Below are positions 1 to 59,960 of a stretch of DNA of 64,000 bases, one piece after another. The DNA lies in contig NW_005434566.1 in the NCBI RefSeq assembly GCF_000315625.1, positions 1 through 64,000 of the forward strand, in the 5' to 3' direction. Position 1 is the stretch's first letter. The number at the start of each line of letters is the position of its first letter. The notes beneath the pieces were generated by a model that worked only from the letters and a program-made list of their open reading frames with translations, was not told the origin of the DNA and did not search any database. The translations under genes were made by a program, and so were the position numbers. The stretch is from Guillardia theta CCMP2712 (Eukaryota; Protista; Cryptophyta).

Positions 1-83
1 ATCCTCATCCTCATCCTCATCGTCATCATCATCATCATCATCATCATCTCCATCATCATCATCATCTCCATCATCATCATCTG

Positions 84-123
<40 letters not shown>

Positions 124-128
124 TCCAT

Positions 129-183
<55 letters not shown>
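1..183. repeat. (CAT)n/(CATCTC)n microsatellite
   Basis: Direct reading of the sequence. Confidence 0.95.
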
Positions 184-184
<1 letters not shown>

Positions 185-239
185 CCTCAACCATTACAAC
201 AAGTTGCTGCCCCTCTGCTTCCTTGCCTGAGCTCTCAAA

Positions 240-3361: not shown

Positions 3362-3752
3362 AATCATCATCTCCATCATCTCCATCATCATCATCATCAT
3401 CATCATCTCCATCATCATCATCATCTCCATCATCATCATCATCATCTCCATCATCATCATCATCACCACCACCACCACCACCACCACCACCACCACCATC
3501 ANNNNNNNNNNNNNNNNNNNNNNNNNNNNNNNNNNNNNNNNNNNNNNNNNNNNNNNNNNNNNNNNNNNNNNNNNNNNNNNNNNNNNNNNNNNNNNNNNNN
3601 NTCATCATCATCATCATCATCATCTCCATCATCATCATCATCTCCATCTCCATCATCATCATCTCCATCATCATCATCATCATCATCTCCATCATCATCA
3701 TCTCCATCATCTCCATCTCCATCATCATCATCATCATCATCTCCATCATCAT
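3362..3752. repeat. (CAT)n/(CAC)n microsatellite spanning an assembly gap (N 3502-3601)
   Basis: Direct reading. Confidence 0.9.
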
Positions 3753-3919
3753 CCCTCCTTTCCCCCCCCACCAGTGCATTTTGATAAAATCGACCTGAAA
3801 TAGACAAACTGAACTCAACTCATGATAACTAAAATAAATTACTATATAACTAAAACCTTTGCTCGTAGGTAGGGTAGTCCCAGACTTTACTTAAGTTTGA
3901 TTTCACGGTTATCAGGTGA

Positions 3920-24638: not shown

Positions 24639-27872
<3,234 letters not shown>

Positions 27873-41521: not shown

Positions 41522-41852
41522 GGCCAGCCGTTCTGAGAGTGGAGGGACCGGCGACGGGGGTGGGTAAAAGGTGAGCATGATTTCTTTTTTGTCAGAAGGG
41601 GTAGGGTACCACTGGCCATCTGGTATTATGATACGGTAGGGTAGGGGAATGGACTGGGTGGAGCCTTCAAGTCTGAGGGATCAGAGGGGGTATGGGTACT
41701 AGAATCAGCCTGTGTACGGTCCCGGGTCCTGGAGGAGGGGGTGGGGAGGGGTGGTCAGGTAAGAAACTTAGTACTGAGAATTTTACTCACTTTAATGCGA
41801 CGGGGTGGGCGGTCGAGAGACAATAATGAAGTAAACGGCGTTCACCGCAATG

Positions 41853-42155
<303 letters not shown>

Positions 42156-42369
42156 GAGATCACGAAGGTGACGACGCAGCTATGACGCGGAAGCTGAAGA
42201 CTTACACAACGGTTTGCTGCCGGTTTGAAGGTGGGTGGCATGCCGTCTCCTCTGTCTTTAAAGTGTTGGCTGCCAGCTTTGCGGCGCGGATGGAGAAAGA
42301 GCAGCCGCCGACAAGGAGCCGGCGCTGCCCGGGGCAGCGGACAGAGAAGAATTCCGCCTGCGCAGCGCA

Positions 42370-44158
42370 ATGTGCATGCTCGCGCTTCGCTGACCGCCGG
42401 ATCAGCAGCGTGATATCCTCACCTTGCACAGCCGCAGGACATACTCGCTCCAGTCGCAGGATAGGGTCTTGCAGTCTACCATCTTTGAGTCATTTTCCTG
42501 AGCGAGACCTGAGCCACTCTCCGATGCGAGTCTCGAGCTACTACCCCCTCAAGGCCTTCCCGCACCGCTATGCTCAGATGCTCGACTGCTATCTCCATGG
42601 CATGCCGATCTGCCAGTGTCCGACGGAATGTGATGGATGTCAGCGCGAGCTCGATCCCTCCGTTGCTGCACATCATCTCCAGACCTGCAAACGCCGATCC
42701 TCCAAGCTTCCCACGGCGCATGACAACCTTACTCGTACGATTCGGTCGATGCTGAACGAAGCTGGTCTTCAGAGCGTCATCGATACAGTCGGGGATCCTC
42801 GTTCTCGACGGCAGGTACCCTCCCATCCTCATGACCGCAAGATGAAGGGCGATATCCACATCCCTGGAATCCGCGATCGAGGGTCCGAGCAGTACGAGGG
42901 CTTGATGGCGGACGTGACGTTGGTCCACCCTTACATTGGTAGCTCTGCCGACCTGACCAAGTGGGGGGAGGTCAACCTCGACGCCCTCCATGTTGCAGCG
43001 TCTGAGAAGATTCGCAAACATCGCTCTGCATATGCCATGACTACTCCTCCTCGAGCGTTCATCCCTCTTGCCATCTCGACGGACGGTACCCTGCATCCTG
43101 ACACCCTCCGCTTCATCTGGTATCTGGCGGACATCATTGCTCAGCGCTCGATGCCTCTTGAGGATGCGGCGTTTGGTCGGCACTTCGTGCCTGATGACGG
43201 ACCTGCTGCTGAGGTCTTGGCTCGCAAACGCGCCGCCACCTATCAGCGCCTCACTATGCAGCTGACGCTGGAGGCGCTCTTGTCTGGTGCGAGGCGCATG
43301 ACGCCCTTGCGGGCGCAAGCACTTCTCGAGCCAGAGGACAGCTCCTCCTCGGACTTTGTCGAGTCGCCCGAGGAGGAGTCTTCGCCGGAGGTCTCCGACT
43401 CCGATGGGGGAAACACGTCGAGTGGCCCCGACGATCGGCGCGGAGCTGGCCGCAGGCGTCTCCGTCCCTCACAGTGACGTCGGGTGCCTCCGGAGAGCTC
43501 GACACCACTGGGGTGCTTGCTGCTGGTCCGAGCTCGCCTGCTTCCTCCCCGGCATCGGTCGGGTCACGGGCCGGGCATTGCTGCGGCGTCGCCGCCGTCA
43601 CGGGCCACGTCAGCCACGGGCGGTGTTGGTTTCGGCTACCGCTGACTCGGAGGCTAGCGAGGAGGACTACCTCGAGCGGTACCGTGTTCCTGTGTCCAGC
43701 AGTATTAATGGATTTACTGGCAGAAGGTAAAAAGTGCCTCAAGCAAAACAAAGCCTCCCTCCGTCCGCTGCCCCAGGCGGACCCCCGGGCAACGCCGGCT
43801 CCTTGTCGGCGGCTGCCCTTTCTCCGTCCGCGGTCGCCCGCTTTGTGGCGGCAGCGGACGTCTCGACTGACAGTGGTCAGTCGGCTGCCTCCGGGTATCG
43901 CGTCTAAGGGATGTTATTCCTCCTGCATGCTCCTGCTGCTTGTTGCTTGATTGCCTGACCCTTCGGCTGCTTGTCTGCGCGGCTTCGCGCTTGGGCTGGC
44001 GGTGCCGCGTCTGGGTGCCAGCAGTGCTGGTTCTTTTCGGGCTTGTGTTTTGTGTGTGATTGTGCAGCTTCTCGCTGTGCGCTGTGTGCCAGGAGGTTTA
44101 GCTTGTTCCTGCCGCGTTTGTTTTGCTTGAGGCACTTTTTACCTTCTGCCAGTAAATC
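42370..44158 (+). mobile_element. 5'-truncated retrotransposon copy (zinc knuckle, RLE, 3' UTR)
   Basis: CQCPTECDGC...HHLQTC, AHD, GDI, ADVT, EKIRKH, FIPLAISTDG; ends CCAGTAAATC at 44158; contains an antisense tail insert at 43701-43751. Confidence 0.88.
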
Positions 44159-44713
44159 GGACTCCTTCCCGCACCGCTATGCTCAGATGCTCGACTGCTA
44201 TCTCCATGGCATGCCGATCTGCCAGTGTCCGACGGAATGTGATGGATGTCAGCGCGAGCTCGATCCCTCCGTTGCTGCACATCATCTCCAGACCTGCAAA
44301 CGCCGATCCTCCAAGCTTCCCACGGCGCATGACAACCTATCGGCACGGATGGATTTCATGCTAGTCAGCTCCGAGCGAAGGTTTTTACCCTCAACGAACT
44401 AACAATGGATTGACTGGCAGAAGGTAAAAGAGCTCTCGAAGCTCGGGCTCGTCCAGCATGGCTTCATGTTCAAGACGCTGGTGAGGGCGAGCCATCTCCA
44501 GAAGCTGCGCTTCTTCCTCCAGGGGTCGAGCGTCGCGTCATCGATACAGTTAGAATAGGATTTACAGTGGGGGATCCTCGTTCTCGACGGCAGGTACCCT
44601 CCCATCCTCATGACCGCAAGATGAAGGGCGATATCCACATCCCTGGAATCCGCGATCGAGGGTCTGAGCAGTACGAGGGCTTGATGGCGGACGTGACGTT
44701 GGTCCACCCTTAC

Positions 44714-45181
44714 GACTCGGAGGCTAGCGAGGAGGACTACCTCGAGCGGTACCGTGTTCCTGTGTCCAGCCTCCCTCTGTCCGCTGCCCCAGGCGGACCC
44801 CCGGGCAACGCCGGCTCCTTGTCGGCGGCTGCCCTTTCTCCGTCCGCGGTCGCCCGCTTTGTGGCCGGGCAGCCGCTCGTCTCGACTGACAGTGGTCAGT
44901 CGGCTGCCTCCGGGTATCGCGTCTAAGGGATGTTATTCCTCCTGCATGCTCCTGCTGCTTGTTGCTTGATTGCTTGACCCTTAGGCTGCTTGTCTGCGCG
45001 GCTTCGCGCTTGGGCTGGCGGTGCCGCGTCTGGGTGCCAGCAGTGCTGGTTCTTTTCGGGCTTGTGTTTTGTGTGTGATTGTGCAGCTTCTCGCTGTGCG
45101 CTGTGTGCCAGGAGGTTTAGCTTGTTCCTGCTTTGTTTTGCTTGAGGCACTTTTTACCTTCTGCCAGTAAATCCATTAGGA
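44714..45181 (+). mobile_element. 5'-truncated copy nested in another copy, TSD CCTTAC
   Basis: CCTTAC at 44708-44713 and 45182-45187; the host copy reads GGTCCACCCTTAC|ATTGG elsewhere. Confidence 0.9.
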
Positions 45182-45324
45182 CCTTACATTGGCAGCTCTG
45201 CCGACCTGACCAAGTGGGGGGAAGTCAACCTCGACGCCCTCCATGTTGCAGCGTCTGAGAAGATTCGCAAACATCGCGCTGCATATGCTATGACTACTCC
45301 TCCTCGAGCGTTCATCCCTCTTGC

Positions 45325-45627
45325 AGCCGACTGACAGTGGTCAGTCGGCTGCCTCCGGGTATCGCGTCTAAGGGATTTTCTTCCTCCTGCATGCTCCTGC
45401 TGCTTGTTGCTTGATTGCTTGACCCTTAGGCTGCTTGTCTGCGCGGCTTCGCGCTTGGGCTGGCGGTGCCGCGTCTGGGTGCCAGCAGTGCTGGTTCTTT
45501 TCGGGCTTGTGTTTTGTGTGTGATTGTGCAGCTTCTCGCTGTGCGCTGTGTGCCAGGAGGTTTAGCTTGTTCCTGCTTTGTTTTGCTTGAGGCACTTTTT
45601 ACCTTCTGCCAGTAAATCCTATACTAT
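45325..45627 (+). mobile_element. 5'-truncated copy nested in another copy, TSD CTCTTGC
   Basis: CTCTTGC at 45318-45324 and 45628-45634. Confidence 0.9.
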
Positions 45628-46463
45628 CTCTTGCCATCTCGACGGACGGTACCCTGCATCCTGACACCCTCCGCTTCATCTGGTATCTGGCGGACATCAT
45701 TGCTCAGCGCTCGATGCCTCTTGAGGATGCGGCGTTTGGTCGGCACTTCGTGCCTGATGACGGACCTGCTGCTGAGGTCCTGGCTCGCAAACGCGCCGCC
45801 ACCTATCATCCTTATCAGCGCCTCACTATGCAGCTGACGCTGGAGGCGCTCTTGTCTGGTGCGAGGCGCATGACGCCCTTGCGGGCGCAAGCACTTCTCG
45901 AGCCAGAGGACAGCTCCTCCTCGGACTTTGTCGAGTCGCCCGAGGAGGAGTCTTCGCCGGAGGTCTCCGACTCCGATGGGGGAAACAGGCGTCTCCGTCC
46001 CTCACTGTGACATCGATACAGTGGGGGATCCTCGACGGCAGGTACCGTCCTCCCATCCTCATGACCGCAAGATGAAGGGCGATATCCACATCCCTGGAAT
46101 CCGCGATCGAGGGTCCGAGCAGTACGAGGGCTTGATGGCGGACGTGACGTTGGTCCACCCTTACATTGGCAGCTCTGCCGACCTGACCAAGTGGGGGGAG
46201 GTCAACCTCGACGCCCTCCATGTTGCAGCGTCTGAGAAGATTCGCAAACATCGCTCTGCATATGCCATGACTACTCCTCCTCGAGCGTTCATCCCTCTTG
46301 CCATCTCGACGGACGGTACCCTGTCTCACTATGCAGCTGACGCTGGAGGCGCTCTTGTCTGGTGCGAGGCGCATGACGCCCTTGCGGAATGAATGATGGG
46401 GCTCTCTCCCACTCCGTTTTGGCATCATTCTCATAAGGCCGCTGGCCTTTTTTTAAATCTCGT

Positions 46464-47148
46464 GTATGGCCTTATTTTCTCCTGTGTATTTCTCGCAGCA
46501 CCTCGCAAATTCTCTTACCATTCTCATGTGAAATATTTTTCCGCACCATAATGGTGAGGGATATTTTTGAGAGATCGTGAGAACTCGCATGAGAAAAATG
46601 ATGTAATGTTTCAGTGTGTATTTCTGACACTCTCTTAAAATTGTGTTACCATTCTCGTGTGAAATATTTTTCCGCACCAAAATGGTAAAAGAATTTTTAA
46701 GAAGTTCAGAAAAACTTCGCACGAAAAAAAATAGAGATATTGTGAGACAAATGGCGCAGGGGGCATGATACCACTAATATAAGGATATAAGTATGGCTAA
46801 TATAAGTATGGCCTTTTCTAATATAAGTATGGCCTTATTTTCTCCTGTGTATTTCTCGCAGCACCTCGCAAATTCTCTTACCATTCTCATGTGAAATATT
46901 TTTCCGCACCATAATGGTGAGGGATATTTTTGAGAGATTGTGAGAACTCGCATGAGAAAAATGATGTAATGTTTCAGTGTGTATTTCTGACACTCTCTTA
47001 AAATTGTGTTACCATTCTCGTGTGAAATATTTTTCCGCACCAAAATGGTAAAAGAATTTTTAAGAAGTTCAGAAAAACTTCGCACGAAAAAAAATAGAGA
47101 TATTGTGAGACAAATGGCGCAGGGGGCATGATACCACTAATATAAGGA
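46464..47148. repeat. 322-bp direct repeat x2 (46464-46785, 46827-47148) with internal sub-repeats; putative viral terminal/origin region
   Basis: Near-identical copies with a 363-bp period; each contains TTACCATTCTC(A/G)TGTGAAATATTTTTCCGCACCA twice; the spacer is built of TAATATAAGTATGGC repeats. Confidence 0.9.
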
Positions 47149-47228
47149 CAGTCACATGAGATCAAAAATATATAATGTAATTCGATGTGCTGAGGCGGGC
47201 TTACAAATAAAATATGCGTTATTAATAA

Positions 47229-48038
47229 ATGAAAAACCATTTTTTATTCTCATATGCTGGTAACAAACGTGAAGAGGTAGAGCATATATATTCAAAGATT
47301 AATTTTGAAAATATTGACACAATATGCGAGCCTTTTTGTGGTTCTTGTGCTGTGTCCTATTACATATGGAAGCAATTCCCAACAAAAAGATTTAGGTATG
47401 TTCTAAATGATTTAGACAAGAATTTATATGCGCTTCTTAGCTTGATGAAATCAGGAGATGAAAAGAGGATGGAAGAGATAGAGAAAGAGATAAATGATAT
47501 GGTCAGAGATGCGGATGATGAAATAATTATAACAAAAGAAGAATACAATAAATTCATAAGAAATAAGACACTCGCAGGCTTCATAATGGCTAATAAATAT
47601 TTTAACATGCGTGCTGGTATGTTTCCAGTCAGGGATTATAAGTCCCGTTTCAATAAAAAGTTTAAATTTTCAGATTATCCAATATATGACTTCTTAACAA
47701 CAGAAGACATAACTATCTTAAATAAGGATGGGTGTGAAGTTATACAAGAATATGATAAGGATAATGTCTTTATGTTTCTAGACCCTCCATATATAGCATC
47801 AAATAATAACTTTTATTCAGAGCAAAAGCTTAATATGTATCAATATTTAGTGAAAATAGGTTTTAAGAATTTCAAGAGCAAGATGCTAATATGTCACGAG
47901 AACAATTGGCTTTTCAAGATAATATTCAAAGACTACATAAATGATGAAGAAGAGTACAAAAAGCAATATCAAAACTCTTTACGTAGTGAAGGCAACAAGA
48001 AGAAGACAACAACTCACATATGTATTATGAATTACTAA
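47229..48038 (+). CDS. Dam-like (D12 class, alpha-type) N6-adenine DNA methyltransferase 1
   Basis: FSYAGNK, EPFCGS (SAM-binding), LND, FLDPPY (catalytic); 269 aa. Confidence 0.92.
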   Translation: MKNHFLFSYAGNKREEVEHIYSKINFENIDTICEPFCGSCAVSYYIWKQFPTKRFRYVLNDLDKNLYALLSLMKSGDEKRMEEIEKEINDMVRDADDEIIITKEEYNKFIRNKTLAGFIMANKYFNMRAGMFPVRDYKSRFNKKFKFSDYPIYDFLTTEDITILNKDGCEVIQEYDKDNVFMFLDPPYIASNNNFYSEQKLNMYQYLVKIGFKNFKSKMLICHENNWLFKIIFKDYINDEEEYKKQYQNSLRSEGNKKKTTTHICIMNY

Positions 48039-48059
48039 TAAAATATGCGTTATTAGTAA

Positions 48060-48857
48060 ATGAAAAACCATTTCTTCTTTCCTTACGTTGGTAATAAGAG
48101 AGAAGAGGTTGAGCATATATATTCAAAGATAAATTTTGAAAATATTGACACGATATGCGAGCCTTTCTGTGGGTCTTGTGCTATGTCTTATTACATATGG
48201 AGGCAATTCCCAACAAAAAGATTTAAGTATGTGTTGAATGATACTGACAAGAATTTATATGAGCTTCTAACCCTTGTTAGATCTGGAGATGCTGAGAAGA
48301 TGAAAAAGATTGAGAAAGAGATAAATGATATTATCAGAAACGAGGATGATGAGATTGTGATAACAATTGAACAATATAAAGATTTTATAAAGACCAGTGG
48401 ATTATCCGGTTATATAATGGCTAATACATATTTCAACTTAAAAGCAGCCCTTTTTCCTATCAAAGATCGTTATAAGTCTCGTTTTAGTAAGAAGTTCAAA
48501 TTTTCAAACTGTCCAATGTATGACTTTCTTACATCTGAGGATATAACCATCTTTAACAAGGATGGTTCTGACATCATTGAAGAATATGATAAGGATAATG
48601 TGTTTATGTTTTTAGATCCTCCATATTTAGCTTCTTGTAATAGTTTTTATTCAGAGCAAAAGCTCAATATGTATGAGTACATAATAATGAGAGGCTTAAA
48701 AAATTTTAATAGCAAGATGCTAATGTGTCACGAGAATAATTGGATTTTCAAACTATTATTTAGAGACTACATTAATAGTGATGAGGATGAGTACAAAAAG
48801 CTTTATCTGTTTGGAAGAAAGAAGGCAACAACTCACATATGTATTATGAATTACTAA
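48060..48857 (+). CDS. Dam-like N6-adenine DNA methyltransferase 2 (tandem paralogue)
   Basis: FPYVGNK, EPFCGS, LND, FLDPPY; collinear with MTase 1; 265 aa. Confidence 0.92.
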   Translation: MKNHFFFPYVGNKREEVEHIYSKINFENIDTICEPFCGSCAMSYYIWRQFPTKRFKYVLNDTDKNLYELLTLVRSGDAEKMKKIEKEINDIIRNEDDEIVITIEQYKDFIKTSGLSGYIMANTYFNLKAALFPIKDRYKSRFSKKFKFSNCPMYDFLTSEDITIFNKDGSDIIEEYDKDNVFMFLDPPYLASCNSFYSEQKLNMYEYIIMRGLKNFNSKMLMCHENNWIFKLLFRDYINSDEDEYKKLYLFGRKKATTHICIMNY

Positions 48858-48876
48858 TTTTATAAAGTATTAATAA

Positions 48877-49122
48877 ATGGTTTATCAGCTTTTAGAAGAA
48901 GGGAAAATTTATTATTGCGAGGCCTTAGAAAGACCTTGGACTAGATTTAATGTGCTAGACACAATCGGTGTCAAGCTTACCCCTCCAAAAAAAATGTCAT
49001 GGTATAGTAAATTCAAACAATGGCTTCAAACAGCTGGTCAAAGGCCCTTAGAGAGTGGAACGATAAGAACCACGGGAAGAATATGTACTGTATCCCCAAG
49101 AAGAACACAAGACCATACGTAG
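48877..49122 (+). CDS. Small viral hypothetical protein
   Basis: ATG preceded by TATTAATAAATG, as for MTase 1; its 3' part overlaps the next ORF, so the true end is uncertain. Confidence 0.4.
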   Translation: MVYQLLEEGKIYYCEALERPWTRFNVLDTIGVKLTPPKKMSWYSKFKQWLQTAGQRPLESGTIRTTGRICTVSPRRTQDHT

Positions 49123-49214
49123 AGGTGGTCAAGATCCAAAAAAGGATAGAACAAGGAGAAGGCCCCGCACATCGCACTCGCAGTCATAAAGGGGTTTATG
49201 CTACAAGCATCTAA
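49020..49214 (+). CDS. Small basic viral hypothetical protein (64 aa)
   Basis: AAATG start context; compact basic sequence NSWSKALREWN...YCIPKKNT..Y.EV. Confidence 0.55.
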   Translation: MASNSWSKALREWNDKNHGKNMYCIPKKNTRPYVEVVKIQKRIEQGEGPAHRTRSHKGVYATSI

Positions 49215-49230
49215 AAAGCTTTTATCCCCG

Positions 49231-50025
49231 CTAAAGATCTAATCCATACTCATTCTTAATCTTCACCCATTCACTTCTATATTTATTTGCTTTTTCTTCG
49301 TTCTTCTGCTCCCATTCAGAAAATAACTTCCTACCATCTTTTGCCTCTACAACATTCAACACATCGACATCGTCAAAATTTACCTTGTCTTTATCAAAGA
49401 ATATCACACTGTACCATGTGCCTTCGTTATCTTTGTCTATACGATACACCACACCAATATAAAAACGATGCGAGTACTTTCTTTTGATGAAGGTATCCAC
49501 TGTGATATCTTTTGAATTACGCGGTGGGTTCCTTTTTGGTGCTATGTACTCAATAGGTTTGTTTGACTTATCCATGCCCTTCATGACCTCATAAATCTTA
49601 TCTAGATCCTCATGTTTAAACCACTCATTACCATATTGAGCTGTTGTGACCTCTTTCATCTTTCTTTTAACCTCAAGCTCATATTTTTCTTGCGGTGATC
49701 TAGTTTGATTTGTGTTTTTAACATATTTATACCACACTCTAAGATGTAACACATGAAAATCACCATCATAATAGCGTTCATAATCTGATAATCTTCTTAT
49801 AATCTCAGAAGAACCAATAGAAGAAATACCAAGCTTTATCAAATCACCCTTTCCATTGATTGTTTTGGGTGTTCTTATTATATAAAAAGCCGATGTGTCA
49901 AGATACTTCGCATATGTGTCCTTAAATTCTGACCATTTAATGCCATCCTTGGCATTGAAAACAATTTCACCGGCCTTGCTGCCTCTTGGCTTTTCAACTT
50001 CTGAGACTGTTGATGTGCTGATCAT
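49231..50025 (-). CDS. T5orf172/MUG113-like (GIY-YIG superfamily) domain fused to a C-terminal Tudor-like domain
   Basis: FYII...LIKLGIS...RRLSDY...E...GNEWF pattern; C-terminal FYIGVVYRID....TWYSVIFFDKD. Confidence 0.65.
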   Translation of the reverse strand: MISTSTVSEVEKPRGSKAGEIVFNAKDGIKWSEFKDTYAKYLDTSAFYIIRTPKTINGKGDLIKLGISSIGSSEIIRRLSDYERYYDGDFHVLHLRVWYKYVKNTNQTRSPQEKYELEVKRKMKEVTTAQYGNEWFKHEDLDKIYEVMKGMDKSNKPIEYIAPKRNPPRNSKDITVDTFIKRKYSHRFYIGVVYRIDKDNEGTWYSVIFFDKDKVNFDDVDVLNVVEAKDGRKLFSEWEQKNEEKANKYRSEWVKIKNEYGLDL

Positions 50026-50059
50026 TTAATTTATTTTTATATATTAAAATATAGTCACA

Positions 50060-52407
50060 ATGAGTGGAAACAATATATAAATCAAGTAGATGATTATATA
50101 GGTTCTTTGGGTTCTTCTACTCTGCAGCTGACTATTGAAGACATGCAGGAGCAAATTAACAACATTGAAACAACTCTAGGAACAACCACAGATGGTGGCA
50201 CAGTAAATGACAGCAGCCTCATCGGTAGAATTGAAGGGATCGAGACAACAGTCCAAGACAACACACAGAAACACGAGGCCAACACAACAAGCATCAACAA
50301 TATCAATCAGGTCCTCTCAGCATTTGAGAATTTCGCGGATGGCAACTATGAACAGGCAGCACTAGATCTGACAAACTTCTTTACAACGGTAGATAACAAT
50401 TCACAGCAGATCGCACAGCACGTCACAGATATAGCAGGACTAAAAGCCAGCGATAACCAATTCACTCTGACAATACAAGGCCTAGCAGATCAAGTAACAG
50501 GCCATCAAACAGACATATCGGGAATTCTTGATACAAACGCTAGCCAAGACCAACGCTTTACAGATGTAGCAGCGGACCTCCTAGATCTACAAGGCCAGAT
50601 AGACTTTATCAATAACAGCACAGCAGTGCTCTTTGTAGGGCAAGTTCTTTATGAGATTTTAAAATGGAAATTTGGAGCAGCTATCAATGATTTCACTAAG
50701 AGAGTATGGGATCGCATAAATGGCAAATACAAAGGAGAAGGTGAATATGATCCAGTGGCCGAGGGCGATACTTATAATACATTCACAGGTGATAGCATCC
50801 AAGCCATCCTAGATGAGCTCAATGATATGGCCTCTGTGTATAGATACAATAGCTTAAACAACGCTGCGGGCATCAATGCTGACCCTATCTCAACGTATGG
50901 CACAACAATCTATAAATCTTTATTGCTTTATGGCTTGTCTGATGCCAATATTTACCTTACAGGAGATGTCCATTTTGGTTCATTCAGCACCGCCACAGAC
51001 ATATTTACAACAACCAAGAGCCTAAGCAATTATATGGTTTTGAAGGGAGTTAAATCTAATCATTGCTTGAAAATAAATGATGCTGAACAGCTTCTAGCGC
51101 CTGAAATAGGCAATGAGCTATTATTCTTAGATTTTAACACTGATGATTTTGAGGAGGAGGCAACAACGCATAAATTAAAACTCAAACTATCTCTTGGAAG
51201 TATCATAAAAAAGAATGCTACTGGCGACGCAATTGGAATAGGGACAGACCCAATAGCAACATATATATGCGTGATAGATGGCAAGACAAAAATTCAGGGT
51301 ATCTTAGAGATTAAAGATGGGACAACAACAAATTATAAGAATGTTAATGAATACCTATTCTCGAAGGGAGTGGATACAAACGATGTTCTACACATAGATA
51401 GCACTAATGAGCACATACCGCTCAGATATAATACGGATCATTTTGAGAAGGACGCAACGACATTTCAGCTTGAAAGCAAGTTTGAGAATGCCGGCGTAAT
51501 CAAATATGACACAAGCCAAGTTTTGAAGACTGTTGGCATCCATACAGATCCTATTAGCACTTACCCAACAGCACACAAGGGCGATATATTGTTTCTTGGT
51601 GGAAACATAAAAACAAATGGCAGCATCCAGATAGGCACCTTCAATGGCGGGACAAATACATTCTCAATCATAAAAACAGTAAATGATTATTTAGCTATCA
51701 AGGGGGTCAAGGCCGATCATTGTCTTTCAATAGATGAAACAACAGAAAAATTAGAACTCCTATTCAATACCAATGACTTCTATATTGATAACACGGGAGC
51801 GGCTCCAACTTACAAGCTGAATAGTCAATTAAGCAAGGTGATTGAGTTCAACACCACATCAAGAACGGTTGGCATAGGCACGACAACACAAACAGGGGTC
51901 ACCTGTGTCATAGATGGCAAGACAAAGATACAGGGTGTGTTAGAGATAAAAGATGGGGCAACCACTAATTATAAGGATGTCAATTCATATTTATTTGCTC
52001 AGGGTGTGAAGGATGCGCATTGTTTAAAGATAGATGAAACAACAGAGAAGCTAGAACTCTTGTTCAACGCAGAAGACTTCTATATTGACACCACATCAAC
52101 ACCTCCAACAAATAAGCTTAATCTCAAACTGAATGAGATCTTACAGTTTAACTCGGCAACAAATTTGCTTGGCATTGGCACGGCACCTGTCTCTGGTATG
52201 AAGCTAACAATAAATGGCTCAACTAGGGTTCAAGGCTCATTGTTTATAAGAGAAGGGGCAACAACAAATTACAAAGATGTCAATAATTATTTATTTGCTC
52301 AGGGCTTGGATGCCAACGATGTCCTTTATGTAGATAGCACGGATGATCATTTGAAACTACGATACGATACAGCACATTTTACAAAGGATACAACAACATA
52401 CAAATTA
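50060..52407 (+). pseudogene. Viral fibre/tail-fibre-like protein: N-terminal coiled coil plus ~90-aa repeats; 5' frameshift and 3' truncation
   Basis: Repeats of (I/V/L)GIGT..P......IDGKTKIQG.LEIKDG.TTNYK.VN.YLF..G; ATG at 50060 is 1 nt out of frame with the long ORF; the sequence switches to retroelement DNA at ~52408. Confidence 0.7.
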
Positions 52408-53155
52408 GGCGCAAGCACTTCTCGAGCCAGAGGACAGCTCCTCCTCGGACTTTGTCGAGTCGCCCGAGGAGTCTTCGCCGGAGGTCTCCGACTCCGATGG
52501 GGGACACCCTTCGAGTGGCGCCGACGATCGGCGCGGAGCTGGCGAGGCGTCTCCGTCCCTCACTGTGACGTCGGGTGCCTCCGGAGAGCTCGACACCACT
52601 GGGGTGCTTGCTGCTGGTCCGAGCTCGCCTGCTTCCTCCCCGGCATCGGTCGGGTCACGCCGGTCCTTGGGCATTGCCGCGGCGTCGCCGCCGTCACGGG
52701 CGGCTTCCGCTGACTCGGCTACCGCTGACTCGGAGGCTAGCGAGGAGGACTACCTCGAGCGGTACCGTGTTCCTGTGTCCAGCCTCCCTCCGTCCGCTGC
52801 CCCAGGCGGACCCCCCGGCGGGCAGCACCGGCTCCTTGTCGGCGGCTGCCCTTTCTCCGTCCGCGGCCGCCCGCTTTGTGGCGGCAGCGGACGTCTCGAC
52901 TGACAGTGGTCAGTCGGCTGCCTCCGGGTATCGCGTCTAAGGGATGTTATTCCTCCTGCATGCTCCTGCTGCTTGTTGCTTGATTGCTTGACCCTTAGGC
53001 TGCTTGTCTGCGCGGCTTCGCGCTTGGGCTGGCGATCTTGTGTTTTGTGTGTGATTGTGCAGCTTCTCGCTGTGCGCTGTGTGCCAGGAGGTTTAGCATG
53101 TTCCTGCTTTATTTTGCTTGAGGCCCTTTTTACCTTTCAGTGCCAGTAAATCCAT
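52408..53155 (+). mobile_element. 3' half of the retrotransposon copy interrupted by the viral fragment
   Basis: Starts GGCGCAAGCACTTCTCGAG, continuing ...GACGCCCTTGCGG at 46387; ends CCAGTAAATCCATT. Confidence 0.88.
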
Positions 53156-53507
53156 TCCCTAGGCTCGACTGACAGCGGTCAGTCGCCGGATGCATCCGGG
53201 TATCGCGTCTAAGGGAGCTTCATCTCGGACTTCGCCATGCTCCTGCTGCTGGGCGCTGCCGCGTGAGGGTGCCAGCAGTGCTGGTTCTTTTCCGCCCGTG
53301 ACGGCGGCGACGCCGCAGCAATGCCCAAGGACCGGCGTCTACCACTGACTCGGCTACCGCTGACTCGGAGGCTAGCGAGGAGGACTACCTCGAGCGGTAC
53401 CGTGTTCCTGTGTCCAGCCTCCCTCCGTCCGCTGCCCCAGGCGGACCCCCGGGCAACGCCGGCTCCTTGTCGGCGGCTGCCCTTTCTCCGTCCGCGGCCG
53501 CCCGCTT

Positions 53508-53599
53508 CTCGCTGTGGACTGTGTGCCTGCCGGTTCAGCTTGTTCCTGCTTGTTTTGCTTGAGGCACTTTTTACCTTCTGCCAGTAAATCCTATACTCT
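53508..53599 (+). mobile_element. 92-bp 3'-end copy nested in another copy, TSD CCCGCTT
   Basis: CCCGCTT at 53501-53507 and 53600-53606. Confidence 0.9.
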
Positions 53600-54237
53600 C
53601 CCGCTTTGTGGCGGCAGCGGACGTCTCGACAGTGGTCAGTCGGCTGCCTCAGCAGCAGCAGCAGCAGCAGCAGTAACTTCGGCGGTCACCTCGGCACCTG
53701 CAGCCCTCGTCCCTCCCACAGCAGCAGCTGCAGGAGTCGGAGCAGCTGCAACCGCCCCAGCAGCCCTCGCGAGGGCGGCGGCAAAGGCAGAAACAGCCAC
53801 AGCCGCCGCAGCCGCAGCCCACAATGGATCCGCAGCCGCAGCCGCAGCCGCAGCCGCAGCCGCAACACCACCGCCGCTGTCGGCCGCTGCCCTTTCTCCG
53901 TCCGCGGCCGCCCGCTTTGTGGCGGCAGCGGACGTCTCGACTGACAGTGGCCAGTCGGCTGCCTCCGGGTATCGCGTCTAAGGGATGTTATTCCTCCTGC
54001 ATGCTCCTGCTGCTTGTTGTTTGATTGCCTGACCCTTAGGCTGCTTGTCTGCGCGGCTTCGCGCTTGGGCTGGCGCTGCCGCGTCTGGGTGCCAGCAGTG
54101 CTGGTTCTTTTCGGGCTTGTGTTTTGTGTGTGTTTGTGCAGCTTCTCGCTGTGGACTGTGTGCCTGCCGGTTCAGCTTGTTCCTGCTTTGTTTTGCTTGA
54201 GGCACTTTTTATCTTCTGCCAGTAAATCCTATACTCC

Positions 54238-57200
54238 TCCAAGGGGTCCTTCTTGGCCAAATGCCGGATCTTCTTATTCCTGCCCTGTCAGCCATTCGTC
54301 GAGGAGGCAGATTTATTCCCCTCTCCAAGGGAGCTGATAAACCTGGTCTCCGGCCAATTGTCATCGGTTCTGCACACCGTCGACTCGCGACGAAGCTTGC
54401 TTTGGCAGCGATTCGCTCATTTCTTGACCAGCACTTCCTCTCGTCTCACCCTCGAGCGATTCAGTTCGGACTCGATCGAGACGGCTGTCTGAAGTTCTCG
54501 CAAACCGCGTCAGCGCTCCTGCCCCTTCACGCTCGCGGTGATGATGAGGATGTTGCCAACCCCACAGTGCTGGTGAGTTTGGATGCAAAGAACGCCTTCA
54601 ACTCCCTCGACCGCCAGGCTCTCTTCGATGCAATCGAGGGACGTGCGAGTCGCGTCGGACTACTTTGATGGGAGCATCACTGAAGGCGCTCGCTTGCCCT
54701 CTTGCGAGCATCTCCGTTTGTTCGCCTCCTACCTCTCCAGCTACTATGGAGACTCTGCTGACCTTCGACTCTTTCACAAAAGTCAGTCAGCCTCCGTTCA
54801 GTGTACCTCGGGCGTCTGTCAGGGCGATGTCCCCTCCAGCGTATTTTTCTGCCACAGTATCCACCCCCTGCTCCTCCATATCGCAGAGCTTTTTCCCTCT
54901 GTTCGAGTCTTGGCCTATGCTGACAACGTCGTGCTTGTCGGTCCACTCGAGGATGCCGTTGCAGCTACGTCCGCTATGAAGAAGTACATGTTGGCTGATC
55001 TGAAGCTCGAGATTCAACCTCGCGAGTCGAAAGTTTACATCCCCTCCTGGCATCAACACCCTGATCTCTCGCAGCTGAAGAAGAGCCTTAAGCGCCGTCT
55101 CAAGACTCAACTTCTTCACTTCGAGGTCGTCACTGGCGGGATTACACTTGGCGGCCTGCCTATCGGCACGCGCTCGGATGGATTTCATGCCAGGCTAGTC
55201 AGCTCCGAGCGAAGGTTTCTACCCTCAACGAAGAGCTCTCGAAGCTCGGGCTCGTCCAGCATGGCTTCATGTTCAAGACGCTGGTGAGGGCGAGCCATCT
55301 CCAGAAGCTGCGCTTCTTCCTCCAGGGGTCTTCTCCGTTTCTCCCGCCAGTAAATCCTATATACCCGCGGGTCCAATCACAGATTCGTCGCTTTGACCTC
55401 TCTGTCCACCTGGCGCTTGAGAAATACCACCGCTGGCCTTCCTCGCAGTACCTCGCCGAGTCGCCGCGCATCCCGACCTGCTAGAGTTTGCGAGGTTCAA
55501 GCGGGAGCTTCCGCATAGTCGGGGAGGGGACGAGTTCACGCCCTCTGAGGGTCTACACCCCGCTGTTTACTATACGGCTATCGCTCGCTTCCTCGCTTGG
55601 TACTCTGACCAGCCGATGTCCCGGACGCTGCCCTCTCCTCATAGCCTGGACGTTCACTGCTCGAGATCTCTCCGTGCCCAGAAACATCCTCTGGCGACCT
55701 TCTTCGTTGAGGCGCACGACTTCGTTCATAATGCTGGAGCGATCCTCTACCGTCGTGTGAGGGCTCCTGCACCGGCTGCAGATGGCGCGGCGATCGAGTC
55801 CCACCTGCCCCGGCTGCTGTGCCTGATGACGCAGGACGCCCCCCGGCATCTGTGGTACACATCCCTGGTTTGCGCGCTCTCGTCGACTCGTCTCATGAGC
55901 ACTTCATTCCTCCCCCTGCGCAGCGAAATGTGACCCCTCTTGTCATGCGCGTCTTCCCTCGCCATGTGCATGCTCGCGCTGCGCTGACCGATCAGCAGCG
56001 TGATATCCTCACCTTGCACAGCCGCAGGACACACTCGCTCAAGTCGCAGGATAGGGTCTTGCAGTCTACCATCTTCGCTCATTTTCCTGAGCGAGACCTG
56101 AGCCACTCTCCGATGCGAGTCTCGAGCTACTACCCCCTCAAGGCCTTCCCGCACCGCTATGCTCAGATGCTCGACTGCTATCTCCATGGCATGCCGATCT
56201 GCCAGTGTCCGACGAAATGTGATGGATGTCAGCGCGAGCTCGACCCCTCCGTTGCTGCACATCATCTCCAGACCTGCAAACGCCGATCCTCCAAGCTTCC
56301 CACGGCGCATGACAACCTTACTCGTACGATTCGGTCGATGCTGAACGAAGCTGGTCTTCAGAGCGTCATCGATACAGTGGGGGATCCTCGTTCTCGACGG
56401 CAGGTACCCTCCCATCCTCATGGCCGCAAGATGAAGGGCGATATCCACATCCCTGGAATCCGCGATCGAGGGTCCGAGCAGTACGAGGGCTTGATGGCGG
56501 ACGTGACGTTGGTCCACCCTTACATTGGTAGCTCTGCCGACCTGACCAAGTGGGGGGAGGTCAACCTCGACGCCCTCCATGTTGCAGCGTCTGAGAAGAT
56601 TCGCAAACATCGCGCTGCATATGCTATGCCTACTCCTCCTCGAGCGTTCATCCCTCTTGCCATCTCGACGGACGGTACCCTGCATCCTGACACCCTCCGC
56701 TTCATCTGGTATCTGGCGGACATCATTGCTCAGCGCTCGATGCCTCTTGAGGATGCGGCGTTTGGTCGGCACTTCGTGCCTGATGACGGACCTGCTGCTG
56801 AGGTCTTGGCTCGCAAACGCGCCGCCACCTATCAGCGCCTCACCATGCAGCTGACGCTGGAAGCGCTCTTGTCTGGTGCGAGGCGCATGACGCCCTTGCG
56901 GGCGCAAGCACTTCTCGAGCCAGAGGACAGCTCCTCCTCGGACTTTGTCGAGTCGCCCGAGGAGTCTTCGCCGGAGGTCTCCGACTCCGATGGGGGAAAC
57001 CCTTCGAGTGGCCCCGACGATCGGCGCGGAGCTGGCGACTCGGAGGCGTCTCCGTCCCTCACAGTGACGTCGGGTGCCTCCGGAGAGCTCGACACCACTG
57101 GGGTGCTTGCTGCTGGTCCGAGCTCGCCTGCTTCCTCCCCGGCATCGGTCGGGTCACGCCGGTCCTTGGGCATTGCCGCGGCGTCGCCGCCGTCACGGCT

Positions 57201-57687
57201 ACCGCTGACTCGGCTACCGCTGACTCGGAGGCTAGCGAGGAGGACTACCTCGAGCGGTACCGTGTTCCTGTGTCCAGCCTCCCTCCGTCCGCTGCCCCAG
57301 GCGGACCCCCGGGCAACGCCGGCTCCTTGTCGGCGGCTGCCCTTTCTCCGTCCGCGGCCGCCCGCTTTGTGGCGGCAGCGGACGTCTCGACTGACAGTGG
57401 TCAGTCGGCTGCCTCCGGGTATCGCGTCTAAGGGATGTTATTCCTCCTGCATGCTCCTGCTGCTTGTTGCTTGATTGCCTGACCCTTAGGCTGCTTGTCT
57501 GCGCGGCTTCGCGCTTGGGCTGGCGCTGCCGCGTCTGGGTGCCAGCAGTGCTGGTTCTTTTCGGGCTTGTGTTTTGTGTGTGTTTGTGCAGCTTCTCGCT
57601 GTGGACTGTGTGCCTGCCGGTTCAGCTTGTTCCTGCTTTGTTTTGCTTGAGGCACTTTTTACCTTCTGCCAGTAAATCCTATACTAT
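54238..57687 (+). pseudogene. Longest retrotransposon copy: reverse transcriptase, zinc knuckle, RLE, 3' UTR; 5'-truncated and frameshifted
   Basis: RT motifs IPLSK..GLRPIVIG..RRL, QFG, LDAKNAFN, GVCQGD, YADN (54916-54927, expected YADD); RLE motifs in ORF 55819..57474; ends CCAGTAAATCCTATACTAT. Confidence 0.92.
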
Positions 57688-57689
57688 CC

Positions 57690-59311
57690 CCAGACGCGAT
57701 ACCCGTATAGGATGTACTGGCAGAAGGTAACTGAAAAGTGCCTCAAGCAAAACAAAACATCTGTGTACCTGCCGGTTCAGCTTGTTCCTGCTTTGTTTTG
57801 CTTGAGGCACTTTTTATCTTCTGCCAGTAAATCCTATCCTATACCTACCTGTGACTATAGGATTTACTGGCAGAGGGTAAAAAGTGCCTCAAGCAAAACA
57901 AAGCAGGAACAAGCTGAACCGGCAGGCACACAGTCCACAGCGAGAAGCTGCACAATCACACACAAAACACAAGCCCGAAAACAACNNNNNNNNNNNNNNN
58001 NNNNNNNNNNNNNNNNNNNNNNNNNNNNNNNNNNNNNNNNNNNNNNNNNNNNNNNNNNNNNNNNNNNNNNNNNNNNNNNNNNNNNAGTGAAATGTGTGGT
58101 TCTGTACGGTACGTGCGCTTCCCCGGTGGTCCCCCACCCGTTCACAGTCTTCTGCCTGTTGCTTGATTGCTTGACCCTTCGGCTGCTTGTTTGCGCGGNN
58201 NNNNNNNNNNNNNNNNNNNNNNNNNNNNNNNNNNNNNNNNNNNNNNNNNNNNNNNNNNNNNNNNNNNNNNNNNNNNNNNNNNNNNNNNNNNNNNNNNNTT
58301 TGTGTGTGATTGTGCAGCTTCTCGCTGTGAGCTGTGTGCCTGGAGGTTTAGCTTGTTCCTGCCTTGTTTTGCTTGAGGCACTTTTTTACCTTCTGCCAGT
58401 AGATATAGGATTACTTGGCAGAAGATAAAAAGTGCCTCAAGCAAAACAAAGCAGGAACAAGCTGAACCGGCAGGTACACAGTCCACAGCGAGAAGCTGCA
58501 CAAACACACACAAAACACAAGCCCGAAAAGAACCAGCACTGCTGGCACCCAGACGCGGCATCGCCAGCCCAAGCGAGAAGCCGCGCAGACAACCAGTAAA
58601 TCCTATAACTTCCACTGTTTCGATGACGCTCTGCAGACTTATAGGATTTACTGGCAGAAGATAAAAAGTGCCTCAAGCAAAACAAAGCAGGAACAAGCTG
58701 AACCCGCAGGTACACAGTCCACAGCGAGAAGCTGCACAAACACACACAAAACACAAGCCCGAAAAGAACCAGCACTGCTGGCACCCAGACGCGGCATCGC
58801 CAGCCCAAGCGAGAAGCCGCGCAGACAAGCAGCCTAAGGGTCAAGCAATCAAGCAACAAGCAGCAGGAGCATGCAGGAGGAATAAAATCCCTTAGACGCG
58901 ATACCCGGAGGCAGCCGACTGACCACTGTCGCAGACCAGCTTCGTTCAGCATCGACCGAATCGTACGAGTAAGGTGGACGGTAATGGATTTACTGGTTGT
59001 CATGCGCCGTGGGAAGCTTGGAGGATCGGCGTTTGCAGGTCTGGAGATGATGTGCAGCAACGGAGGGGTCGAGCTCGCGCTGACATCCATCACATTCCGT
59101 CGGACACTGGCAGATCGGCATGCCATGGAGATAGCAGTCGAGCATCTGAGCATAGCGATGCGGGAAGGCCTTGAGGGGGTAGTAGCTCGAGACCCGCATC
59201 GGAGAGTGGCTCAGGTCTCGCTCAGGAAAATGAGCGAAGATGGTAGACTGCAAGACCCTATCCTGCGACTTGAGCGAGTGTGTGCAAGGTGAGGATATCA
59301 CGCTGCTGATC
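57690..59311 (-). mobile_element. Cluster of mostly antisense and head-to-head retrotransposon 3' fragments (includes two N-gaps)
   Basis: Repeated TAGGATTTACTGGCAGAAG (reverse complement of the tail); nested insert 58639-58930 with TSD GCAGAC (58633-58638, 58931-58936). Confidence 0.85.
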
Positions 59312-59960
59312 CTAAGTTTCGACAAAAGCGATGTACGGAACACAAACAGAAGCAAAGTAACCAGCACTGCTGGCAACCAGGGCCCTACAGTGACTGCCAG
59401 CCCACGCGCGGAGCCACGTAGACAGCAGAGAGGGGCAAGCGACGAGCATGGGACGCGATACCCGGACGGGCTGCCGCCCGGGCAGGGGGTCCGCCTGGGA
59501 CAGCCGCGCGGTCGCCGGGACATCGGCGTGGAGTCTGGGGGCCTTGCATGCTGATCGGACGGTACCGCTCCAAGTAATGCAAACAGTCCTCCTCACTGTC
59601 CTCAGCGGGCGCAGCGGCCGCCGAGACTCGCCCGAGACCGCCATGGCGGCGACGCTGCAGCTGAGCCTGCGACTCCGCCAGCGGCGCCTTAACCAGGCTC
59701 AGAAAGCAGCAAGGCTCGGACCAGCTCAGTGCGCCGCTGTGAGCACCCTGAGTGGCGTCGAGCTCTTCGGCGGAGGCCCCATCTCGGTCGGACGTCGGAA
59801 CGGTCGAAACGGTCGGACCGTTGAACTTCGGAAGGATCCGGGCCATTCTTGATGCTTCCACCGTCAAAGTCCTAGACCTCCAGCGAAGATTCCTAGGCTC
59901 GGGCGACCCGACAGTGACAAAGTCCTCGAGGAGCGCCGCGTGACTGCCGCTGTCCAGCGT
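59312..59960 (-). mobile_element. Diverged sister-family retroelement 3' region (5' boundary uncertain)
   Basis: Shares only short blocks with the main family on the minus strand: GAGCGGTACCG, TCCGGGTATCGCGTC, GCCAGCAGTGCTGGTT. Confidence 0.6.

What the first reader, a model, noticed from the sequence alone, without database searches (positions are those of the whole stretch)
46380..52420. 6-kb viral DNA fragment captured inside a retrotransposon copy
Seen: the left flank ends ...ATGACGCCCTTGCGG (46387) and the right flank resumes GGCGCAAGCACTTCTCG (52408). The uninterrupted element reads ATGACGCCCTTGCGGGCGCAAGCACTTC (around 56888), so nothing is lost and only one G is shared. The insert stops in the middle of the fibre gene and includes non-coding repeats and genes on both strands. 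Established: integrase-mediated Polinton/virophage insertions are full length with 5-6 bp TSDs, and the known nesting in Cafeteria runs the other way (Ngaro retrotransposons inside virophages). Inference: broken viral DNA was patched into a break within the array, possibly one made by the RLE, so the array acts as a trap for foreign DNA. With the inverted copies nearby, it could be a small-RNA-producing antiviral memory locus.
Basis: partly seen in the sequence, partly recalled or inferred. Interest (0 to 1): 0.8.

Follow-up and report, generated by a model that had tools for sequence, protein, structure and literature searches.

The report
Virus DNA fragment patched into retrotransposon
A 6-kb piece of a small algal DNA virus (polinton-like type) sits exactly inside one dead retrotransposon copy in the cryptophyte alga Guillardia theta. 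It looks like broken viral DNA stitched into a chromosome break, which is a tidy but fairly ordinary viral fossil and shows no sign of being an immune memory locus.

Summary
Window 46388-52407 (6020 bp, GC 0.36 against 0.57 outside) interrupts one copy of a multi-copy element. The two flanks meet at the same base of the intact element, with 1 G shared, no target duplication and no terminal repeats. The same 26-mer site is intact 11 times elsewhere.

The host is Guillardia theta CCMP2712. The element is a reverse-transcriptase family spread over many scaffolds. The RT hit is just under Pfam's cut-off, and the RLE domain was seen by eye only.

The insert carries a 363-bp repeat, two intact tandem Dam-like (D12) DNA methyltransferase genes, an 81-aa ORF, an intact 264-aa gene of unknown function, and a fibre-like gene with 5 repeat units. 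The fibre gene runs open into the junction.

Relatives of the methyltransferases lie on ~20-kb marine contigs that carry protein-primed polymerase B and S74 fibres, one of them with terminal inverted repeats. One methyltransferase has a 96%-identical environmental copy. Fibre relatives occur in samples that also hold Guillardia DNA. The insert has no capsid, polymerase or integrase gene.

Best reading: recent end-joining capture of a sub-genomic fragment of a polinton-like virus. I found no support for the "trap for foreign DNA" and "small-RNA memory" ideas. There is one viral piece, in one orientation, and three other arrays hold none. This is a new member of a known kind, of moderate interest.

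The parts
46388..52407 (.). Whole insert: 6020 bp of low-GC viral-type DNA (1 bp of boundary ambiguity, because one G is shared)
   Evidence: flanks collinear with the intact copy at 56901; GC 0.359 against 0.566.
46464..47253 (.). Non-coding 363-bp tandem repeat, about 2 copies (99% over 46464-47148, then diverging). The 76 nt to its left weakly resemble a further unit end.
   Evidence: The short ORFs inside it have no family hit.
47229..48038 (+). D12-class (Dam-like) N6-adenine DNA methyltransferase 1; 269 aa, intact, DPPY motif present
   Evidence: Pfam PF02086 E=1.6e-15; PHROG 56; 166 metagenome relatives, the best 82% identical; alignment A3.
48060..48857 (+). D12-class DNA methyltransferase 2; 265 aa, intact; paralogue of the first (79% nt)
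   Evidence: Pfam E=2.3e-14; 97% aa and 96% nt identical to an environmental gene (P0004/L013); pN/pS 0.09.
48877..49122 (+). 81-aa ORF, no known relatives
   Evidence: no family hit.
49231..50025 (-). 264-aa gene of unknown function, full length against its two metagenome relatives (257 aa, 58% identical)
   Evidence: No Pfam, PHROG or PDB hit. The AF2 model is unusable (pLDDT 40).
50143..52407 (+). Fibre-like gene: an N-terminal part of about 240 aa plus 5 repeat units of about 100 aa. It is cut by the right junction inside unit 5 and has no internal stop or frameshift. The open frame then runs on into the retroelement to 52713.
   Evidence: Nearest relative P0001 is 76% identical. Only 29 hits among 1.84 billion representatives. 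Residues 1-251 are annotated as GUITHDRAFT_145676.
46011..46387 (+). Left arm of the interrupted retroelement copy; carries one internal deletion relative to other copies
52408..53034 (+). Right arm of the interrupted retroelement copy (96.7% to 56901-57525)
54231..57688 (+). Longest copy of the retroelement in the window, with the intact insertion site at 56901. It is 5'-truncated, and its RT/CCHC/endonuclease-like coding region is broken by four frame changes and no stops relative to an intact 947-aa ORF.
42366..59312 (.). Scrambled array of direct and inverted fragments of the same retroelement. Many fragments end at the element's common 3' end. Two N gaps lie at 57986-58085 and 58199-58298.

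Best explanation
A sub-genomic linear fragment of a polinton-like (small, protein-primed, fibre-bearing) dsDNA virus was joined into a chromosomal double-strand break. The break happened to lie in a dead copy of a reverse-transcriptase retroelement, in a transposon-rich stretch of the Guillardia theta nuclear genome. The joining was by end-joining repair (blunt or 1-bp microhomology), not by a viral integrase. The result is a dead-end endogenous viral element. It has no capsid, polymerase or integrase gene. It keeps three still-intact genes (two Dam-like methyltransferases and one unknown) and a fibre gene cut at the junction. The intact frames, the unameliorated GC and the 99%-identical internal repeats indicate a recent event. 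Shown here: the junction anatomy, the gene content, the viral affinity of the genes and the retroelement nature of the flanks. Inferred: the repair pathway, the source of the break and the age.
For: Junction: both flanks map to base 56901 of the intact copy, with a 1-bp overlap and no TSD. The empty site is intact 11 times elsewhere. There are no terminal inverted repeats in the insert. Viral origin: GC is 0.36 against 0.57. Methyltransferase relatives at 53-56% identity lie on ~20-kb contigs with protein-primed PolB (PF03175, E=1.3e-40), giant Peptidase_S74 fibres and GIY-YIG; L002 also has 131-nt terminal inverted repeats. The contigs carrying the nearest fibre and methyltransferase relatives share further genes with each other and with those 20-kb contigs. 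One fibre homologue comes from a Tara <0.22 um fraction. S74 fibres and Dam-like methylases are described in polinton-like viruses, and G. theta is a known host of endogenous ones (PMC12220804, PMC4642659). Flanks: the 551-aa ORF has 49 relatives, nearly all G. theta proteins on different scaffolds, several with RVT_1. An intact 947-aa ORF gives RVT_1 at E=1.5e-6. Youth: both methyltransferases and the 264-aa gene are full length. MT2 is 96% nt identical to an environmental copy with pN/pS 0.09.
Against: No reads were available, so the junctions rest on a gapped scaffold assembly. No capsid gene was recognised on any relative contig: Pfam found none, and the AF2 model of the 625-aa neighbour of the fibre relative was unusable (pLDDT 36). 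'Polinton-like' therefore rests on polymerase, fibre, size and, for one contig, terminal repeats, not on a capsid. The repair pathway cannot be told from one junction pair; the deletion in the left arm may or may not belong to the same event. Intact frames could also mean the host retains the genes, not only that the insert is young.
Confidence: 0.72

Rival explanations
1. Assembly artefact: viral or contaminant DNA from the culture was wrongly placed within a repeat during scaffold assembly.
For: The window has five N gaps. The array is a jumble of repeats that assemblers handle badly. Bellas et al. stress that endogenous virus regions are often mis-assembled (PMC10120064).
Against: Both junctions fall on the same base of one element copy, with collinear arms. 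A false join would not restore this on both sides. There is no gap within 5 kb of the insert on the right, and none on the left back to 25737. The insert is not repeated in the window.
Confidence: 0.07
2. A full-length polinton-like virus integrated by its own integrase and was later whittled down by deletions.
For: G. theta holds three complete and two partial endogenous polinton-like viruses (PMC12220804). Integrated copies do decay.
Against: Later deletions that removed both viral ends would not leave the two host arms meeting at the same nucleotide with no 5-6 bp duplication. The remaining genes show no decay.
Confidence: 0.05
3. The array is a dedicated trap: breaks made by the retroelement's endonuclease capture foreign DNA, and transcripts across direct and inverted copies yield small RNAs against the virus.
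For: The insert lies in a cluster with inverted element copies about 6 kb away. The element has an endonuclease-like motif series after its RT (by eye).
Against: There is only one viral piece in the 17-kb array, present once and in one orientation, so the locus structure gives no viral double-stranded RNA. Two other arrays have no foreign insert, and the insert in the third is a host repeat found identically at two loci. The site at 56901 is not a recurrent breakpoint among the fragments mapped. The inverted copies lie beyond two N gaps.
Confidence: 0.05
4. The captured methyltransferases are kept and used by the host (domestication), which is why they are intact.
For: There are two full-length frames with DPPY motifs and pN/pS of 0.09 against an environmental copy.
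Against: The low pN/pS is expected if the divergence arose in replicating viruses before capture. GC is unameliorated. The exact proteins are absent from the protein collection and so are not annotated. No transcriptome-derived relatives were seen.
Confidence: 0.08

Closest known systems
Endogenous polinton-like viruses of Guillardia theta (Yutin et al. 2015, PMC4642659; three complete and two partial according to PMC12220804)
   Same: Same host species. Low-GC viral DNA in the nuclear genome. Fibre and methylase genes of the kinds described for polinton-like viruses.
   Different: Those were found through their capsid genes and are whole or near-whole elements. This piece has no capsid, ATPase, polymerase or integrase gene, no terminal repeats and no target duplication. 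The nesting is also reversed: the known G. theta case is a Copia retrotransposon inside the virus.
Endogenous viral elements made by illegitimate (end-joining) recombination, e.g. endogenous caulimovirids of plants (PMC10377300) and organelle DNA inserts at repaired breaks (established knowledge)
   Same: Sub-genomic fragment with arbitrary ends, 0-1 bp of homology at the junctions, no viral integration machinery involved.
   Different: The source here is a polinton-like virus, a group that normally integrates with its own integrase or recombinase. The host is a cryptophyte.
Virus-derived fragments in piRNA clusters among LTR retrotransposons in Aedes mosquitoes (own knowledge, not checked in a paper here)
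   Same: Viral fragment embedded in a retrotransposon-rich cluster.
   Different: Those clusters hold many fragments from several viruses and are shown to produce piRNAs. Here there is one fragment and no small-RNA evidence.
R2-type (restriction-like-endonuclease) non-LTR retrotransposons (PMC4838377)
   Same: The flanking element has an RT followed by a Cys/His motif and a series resembling the RH / PD / D / K..K endonuclease motifs. Its copies are 5'-truncated with a common 3' end.
   Different: There is no profile or structural confirmation of the endonuclease. No rDNA or other recognised target is in the window (no Rfam hit), and there is no poly(A) tail. Copies pile into each other in scrambled arrays.

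Membership tests
Polinton-like virus (complete element) | Double jelly-roll major capsid and penton genes | tested here: not met
   No insert ORF has a capsid-family hit. The insert holds only methylases, two unknown ORFs and a fibre gene. Capsids were also not recognisable on the relative contigs (the AF2 model was unusable).
Polinton-like virus (complete element) | Replication module (protein-primed PolB or primase-helicase) and packaging ATPase | tested here: not met
   Absent from the insert. PolB is present on relatives' contigs L002/L003.
Polinton-like virus (complete element) | Terminal inverted repeats and a 5-6 bp target duplication when integrated | tested here: not met
   No terminal inverted repeat. 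Only 1 bp is shared at the junctions.
Polinton-like virus (origin of the fragment) | Genes whose relatives lie on genomes with the group's layout | tested here: met
   Methylase relatives lie on ~20-kb PolB- and S74-fibre-bearing contigs, one with terminal repeats. Gene sharing links the fibre and methylase relatives to them.
Non-LTR retrotransposon with restriction-like endonuclease | Reverse transcriptase domain | tested here: inconclusive
   RVT_1 E=1.5e-6 at 28.5 bits on the intact 947-aa ORF and E=9e-5 on the window fragment; both are under the 29.6-bit cut-off. Relatives carry precomputed PF00078 and the UniRef name 'Reverse transcriptase'.
Non-LTR retrotransposon with restriction-like endonuclease | CCHC motif and PD-(D/E)-type endonuclease downstream of RT | tested here: inconclusive
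   The motif order was seen by eye in the 551-aa ORF, compared with the description in PMC4838377. No Pfam or PDB hit.
Non-LTR retrotransposon with restriction-like endonuclease | 5'-truncated copies sharing one 3' end | tested here: met
   Fragments end at the same 3' sequence at five places in the window and many in L008 and L015.
End-joining capture of foreign DNA | Precise interruption with 0-few bp homology, no duplication, insert ends arbitrary | tested here: met
   The right end cuts a repeat unit of the fibre gene.
Small-RNA-producing EVE cluster | Several independent viral fragments in the cluster | tested here: not met
   One fragment in this array. None in L008 or L014. The L015 insert is a host repeat.
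Small-RNA-producing EVE cluster | Small RNAs mapping to the viral fragment | not testable with these tools
   No expression data available.

The most novel reading that the evidence does not exclude
Arrays of this self-nesting retroelement in Guillardia are preferred landing sites for broken viral DNA, and they feed a small-RNA pathway that records past polinton-like or giant-virus infections. That would be a protist counterpart of the EVE-bearing piRNA clusters of animals.
Probability: 0.05. Interest if true: 0.8.

Novelty: new member of a known kind. Interest (0 to 1): 0.38.

Why it matters
The insert shows that DNA of polinton-like viruses can enter a protist genome without the viral integrase, as a capsid-less fragment. 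Capsid-based screens, which are how endogenous copies are usually counted, would miss such pieces, so counts of viral DNA in protist genomes are lower bounds. It also flags one G. theta gene model (GUITHDRAFT_145676) as the front end of a viral fibre gene. It links a rare fibre family and a tandem pair of Dam-like methylases to a cryptophyte host. As biology it is one clean, probably recent example of a known process.

Tried and rejected
- IMG/VR scans with the fibre, methylase 1, the 264-aa ORF and the L015 750-aa ORF found no relatives.
- PDB sequence searches found nothing usable. Queries were the RT piece, the 551-aa ORF, the 264-aa ORF alone and as a profile, the whole fibre, a profile of its five repeat units, and the L015 ORF.
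- AF2 models of the 625-aa neighbour of the fibre relative (pLDDT 36) and of the 264-aa ORF (pLDDT 40) were too poor, so no fold search was run. My by-eye guess that the 264-aa protein is T5orf172/GIY-YIG-like is unconfirmed and dropped.
- P0207, a weak fibre hit, lies on a bacterial-looking contig and was ignored.
- Other low-GC patches of the window (10.3, 17-18.5, 38.8, 41.8 kb) have no long ORFs or similarity to the insert. The apparent GC dip at 25 kb is an N gap.
- No Rfam family or tRNA gene is in the window, so no recognisable target gene for the retroelement was found.
- No paper was found for study PRJEB17505.
- Retrotransposon-mediated capture of viral RNA was rejected, because the insert has genes on both strands, non-coding repeats and no poly(A).
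- Possible slip: an earlier count gave the bounds of two overlapping RT ORFs of the retroelement, which brackets one of its frameshifts. No change that would undo it was written. The entry is left as it is, and those bounds are not repeated here.
Full report
**1. The observation**

The window averages 0.57 GC outside 46388-52407 and 0.36 inside. The left flank ends at 46387 and the right flank resumes at 52408. In a self-BLAST of the window, both align to base 56901 of an uninterrupted copy of the same repeat. The two arms are therefore collinear halves of one copy, with one G counted twice and nothing missing at the junction.

A 26-mer spanning the empty site is found intact three times in the window, with none expected in 100 shuffles. 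It is found eight more times in three other loci of the same genome.

The insert has no terminal inverted repeats and is not repeated elsewhere in the window. I compared the two arms with the reference copy separately and did not close the element over the insert.

Two qualifications apply:
- The interrupted copy also carries one internal deletion of about 155 bp in its left arm.
- The window is a gapped scaffold with N runs at 3502-3601, 5186-5293, 25177-25737, 57986-58085 and 58199-58298. None touches the insert.

**2. Host and flanking element**

Neighbouring genes are eukaryotic: an ANF-receptor protein, STT3 and a Zn2Cys6 protein.

The 551-aa ORF that contains the insertion site in the intact copy has 49 relatives. 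Nearly all are hypothetical proteins of Guillardia theta CCMP2712 on many different scaffolds, at 64-99% identity. Several carry RVT_1 or the UniRef name "Reverse transcriptase".

An intact 947-aa ORF of the family, on contig L009, scores RVT_1 at E=1.5e-6 and 28.5 bits, just under the 29.6-bit cut-off. The window's own RT piece gives E=9e-5.

Downstream of the RT, the ORF shows by eye a Cys/His motif and a series in the order of the RH, PD, D and K..K motifs described for the R2 endonuclease (PMC4838377). No Pfam or PDB search confirmed this.

Copies are 5'-truncated and share one 3' end. They pile into one another in scrambled arrays of direct and inverted pieces, here at 42366-59312 and likewise at three other loci.

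Against the intact 947-aa ORF, the longest copy in the window is 5'-truncated and has four frame changes and no in-frame stops. The flanks therefore belong to a dead copy of a reverse-transcriptase retroelement. "RLE-type non-LTR" is likely but not proven.

**3. Content of the insert**

From left to right:
- **Non-coding repeat.** A stretch with a 363-bp repeat of about two copies, 99% identical.
- **Two tandem methyltransferase genes.** Both are D12-class N6-adenine DNA methyltransferases (PF02086, E=1e-15 and 2e-14). They are 79% identical in DNA, full length, and keep the DPPY motif.
- **An 81-aa ORF** with no relatives.
- **A 264-aa gene on the other strand.** It is full length against two metagenome relatives at 58% identity and has no recognisable family.
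- **A fibre-like gene.** It has an N-terminal part of about 240 residues followed by five units of about 100 residues.

The fibre frame has no internal stop or frameshift in 755 codons. It is cut by the junction about 20 residues before the end of unit 5 and then reads on into the retroelement. In its one close relative the protein ends about 20 residues after the last unit, so the missing part may be short. The relative's start codon has no ATG counterpart here, and the first ATG is about 30 codons further in.

Break count for the insert's genes:
- Methylase 1, methylase 2 and the 264-aa gene: none.
- Fibre gene: one truncation at the junction and one possible start-codon loss.

**4. Evidence that it is viral, and of what kind**

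- **Methylase 1** has 166 relatives, almost all from aquatic metagenomes. At 53-56% identity they lie on contigs of about 20 kb, and one gene set recurs in at least two dozen contigs. These contigs encode a protein-primed family-B polymerase (PF03175, E=1.3e-40) and fibres of 1652 to more than 2100 residues with a Peptidase_S74 domain. L002 and L003 also carry a GIY-YIG gene, and L002 has 131-nt terminal inverted repeats.
- **Methylase 2** is 97% identical in protein and 96% in DNA to a gene on an independent run (L013). The upstream sequence there differs from the window, which fits a mosaic relative. pN/pS is 0.09. Methylase 1's closest relative is 82% identical (L006).
- **The fibre** is a rare family, with 29 hits among 1.84 billion representative proteins. 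One hit comes from a Tara Oceans <0.22 um fraction. Its closest relative, on L001, is 76% identical in protein and 82% in DNA.
- **Gene sharing** ties these contigs together. The 625-aa gene beside the fibre relative is 44% identical to the gene beside the closest methylase relative. The 172-aa gene of L001 matches a gene of the 20-kb contigs at about 30% identity.
- **Published context** fits. S74-type fibres are widespread in polinton-like viruses. Dam-like methylases occur in some cryptophyte ones. G. theta already has three complete and two partial endogenous copies on record (PMC12220804; PMC4642659).

I could not recognise a capsid gene on any relative contig. "Polinton-like" therefore rests on polymerase, fibre, genome size and, for one contig, terminal repeats.

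**5. A link to the host outside this genome**

Two samples of ENA study PRJEB17505 hold a contig of the Guillardia retroelement at 97-99% identity (L009). The same two samples also hold three contigs with fibre-gene variants about 80% identical to the insert's:
- L001 and L010, which overlap at 99%.
- L012, whose fibre gene is broken into several ORFs.

Relatives of this virus therefore co-occur with Guillardia DNA elsewhere. Whether they are free or integrated there cannot be told. I did not merge these contigs.

**6. Mechanism**

An integrase-mediated insertion should be whole, bounded by inverted repeats and flanked by a 5-6 bp duplication. None of this is seen.

A deletion-worn full copy would not leave the host arms meeting at one nucleotide. 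Capture of RNA by the retroelement is excluded by genes on both strands, non-coding repeats and the lack of a poly(A) tail.

What remains is end-joining of a broken linear viral fragment into a double-strand break, with blunt ends or 1 bp of microhomology. The nearby deletion in the left arm may be a scar of the same repair or an unrelated event.

The intact frames, the foreign GC and the 99% internal repeat argue for a recent event. The low pN/pS is what is expected if nearly all divergence from the environmental copy arose in replicating viruses.

**7. The trap and memory ideas**

- The 17-kb array holds a single viral piece, once and in one orientation. The inverted pieces nearby are retroelement sequence only and lie beyond two N gaps.
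- Of three other arrays fetched (about 24 kb of element sequence), two have no foreign stretch.
- The third, L015, has a 4.85-kb stretch at about 0.44 GC inside an element copy, with a 750-aa ORF that has no hits. Part of that ORF is annotated identically at two G. theta loci, so the stretch is a host repeat, most likely another transposon.
- Base 56901 is not a recurrent breakpoint among the mapped fragments.

Nothing here supports a dedicated trap. Small RNAs cannot be examined with these tools.

**8. Verdict**

The further ideas are unsupported.

It is a new member of a known kind, an endogenous viral fragment made by illegitimate recombination. Four points of interest remain:
- It comes from a virus group that normally integrates by its own enzyme.
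- It carries no capsid gene, so capsid-based screens would miss it.
- Part of it is annotated as a host gene (GUITHDRAFT_145676).
- It ties a rare fibre family and a tandem methylase pair to a cryptophyte host.

**Rule compliance**

Noticed in passing
window 3502-3601, 5186-5293, 25177-25737, 57986-58085, 58199-58298: Runs of N show that the window is a gapped scaffold. The apparent AT-rich dip at 25-26 kb in a coarse GC profile is only the 561-N gap, which is flanked by CTC/GGA-type simple repeats.
   Followed up: yes
window 50143-50895 (protein P0180): The G. theta annotation has a 280-aa gene model, GUITHDRAFT_145676 / XP_005823489.1, whose first 251 residues are identical to the start of the viral fibre ORF. 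A host 'hypothetical protein' is therefore really the front of a viral gene.
   Followed up: partly
L009, L001, L010, L012 (ENA study PRJEB17505, samples ERZ930071 and ERZ930064): Samples labelled as metagenomes contain the Guillardia retroelement at 97-99% identity together with three contigs carrying variants of the fibre gene, one of them broken into several ORFs. No paper on the study was found.
   Followed up: partly
L015 17009-21861 (G. theta scaffold JH993206.1): Another copy of the retroelement is interrupted by a 4.85-kb stretch at about 0.44 GC. A 73-bp inverted filler of element sequence sits at one junction, and about 70 bp of the element is lost. The stretch encodes a 750-aa ORF with no Pfam, PDB or IMG/VR hit. 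Part of that ORF is annotated identically at two genomic loci, so it is probably an undescribed host transposon.
   Followed up: partly
window 57630-57760: Just past the element's common 3' end, the last 40 bases or so recur as an inverted copy a few dozen bases on, giving a hairpin-like arrangement. Further direct and inverted 3'-end pieces follow up to 59312.
   Followed up: no
window 37912-38242 and 39124-39454: Two 331-bp direct repeats, 99.7% identical and 1212 bp apart, lie beside a 468-aa ORF (39729-41135, minus strand) that has no family hit. This may be a small LTR-like or other repeat-bounded element.
   Followed up: no
window 1-185, 3602-3755, 41850-42156; 15604-15872; 61559-61977: Three kinds of simple tandem arrays: one short-period repeat shared by three sites, a 6-bp-period array, and a 26-bp-period array that lies inside long ORFs in several frames.
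   Followed up: no
window 47179-47228 and 48010-48059: The two methylase genes are preceded by nearly the same 25 nt ending in TAATAAATG or TAGTAAATG. The 81-aa ORF also starts at TTAATAAATG. This may be a shared upstream signal or simply part of the duplication.
   Followed up: no
L013 1-286 against window 47750-48036: The environmental gene that is 96% identical to methylase 2 has an unrelated sequence upstream. The tandem methylase pair is therefore not conserved in that relative, which points to gene-level mosaicism.
   Followed up: partly
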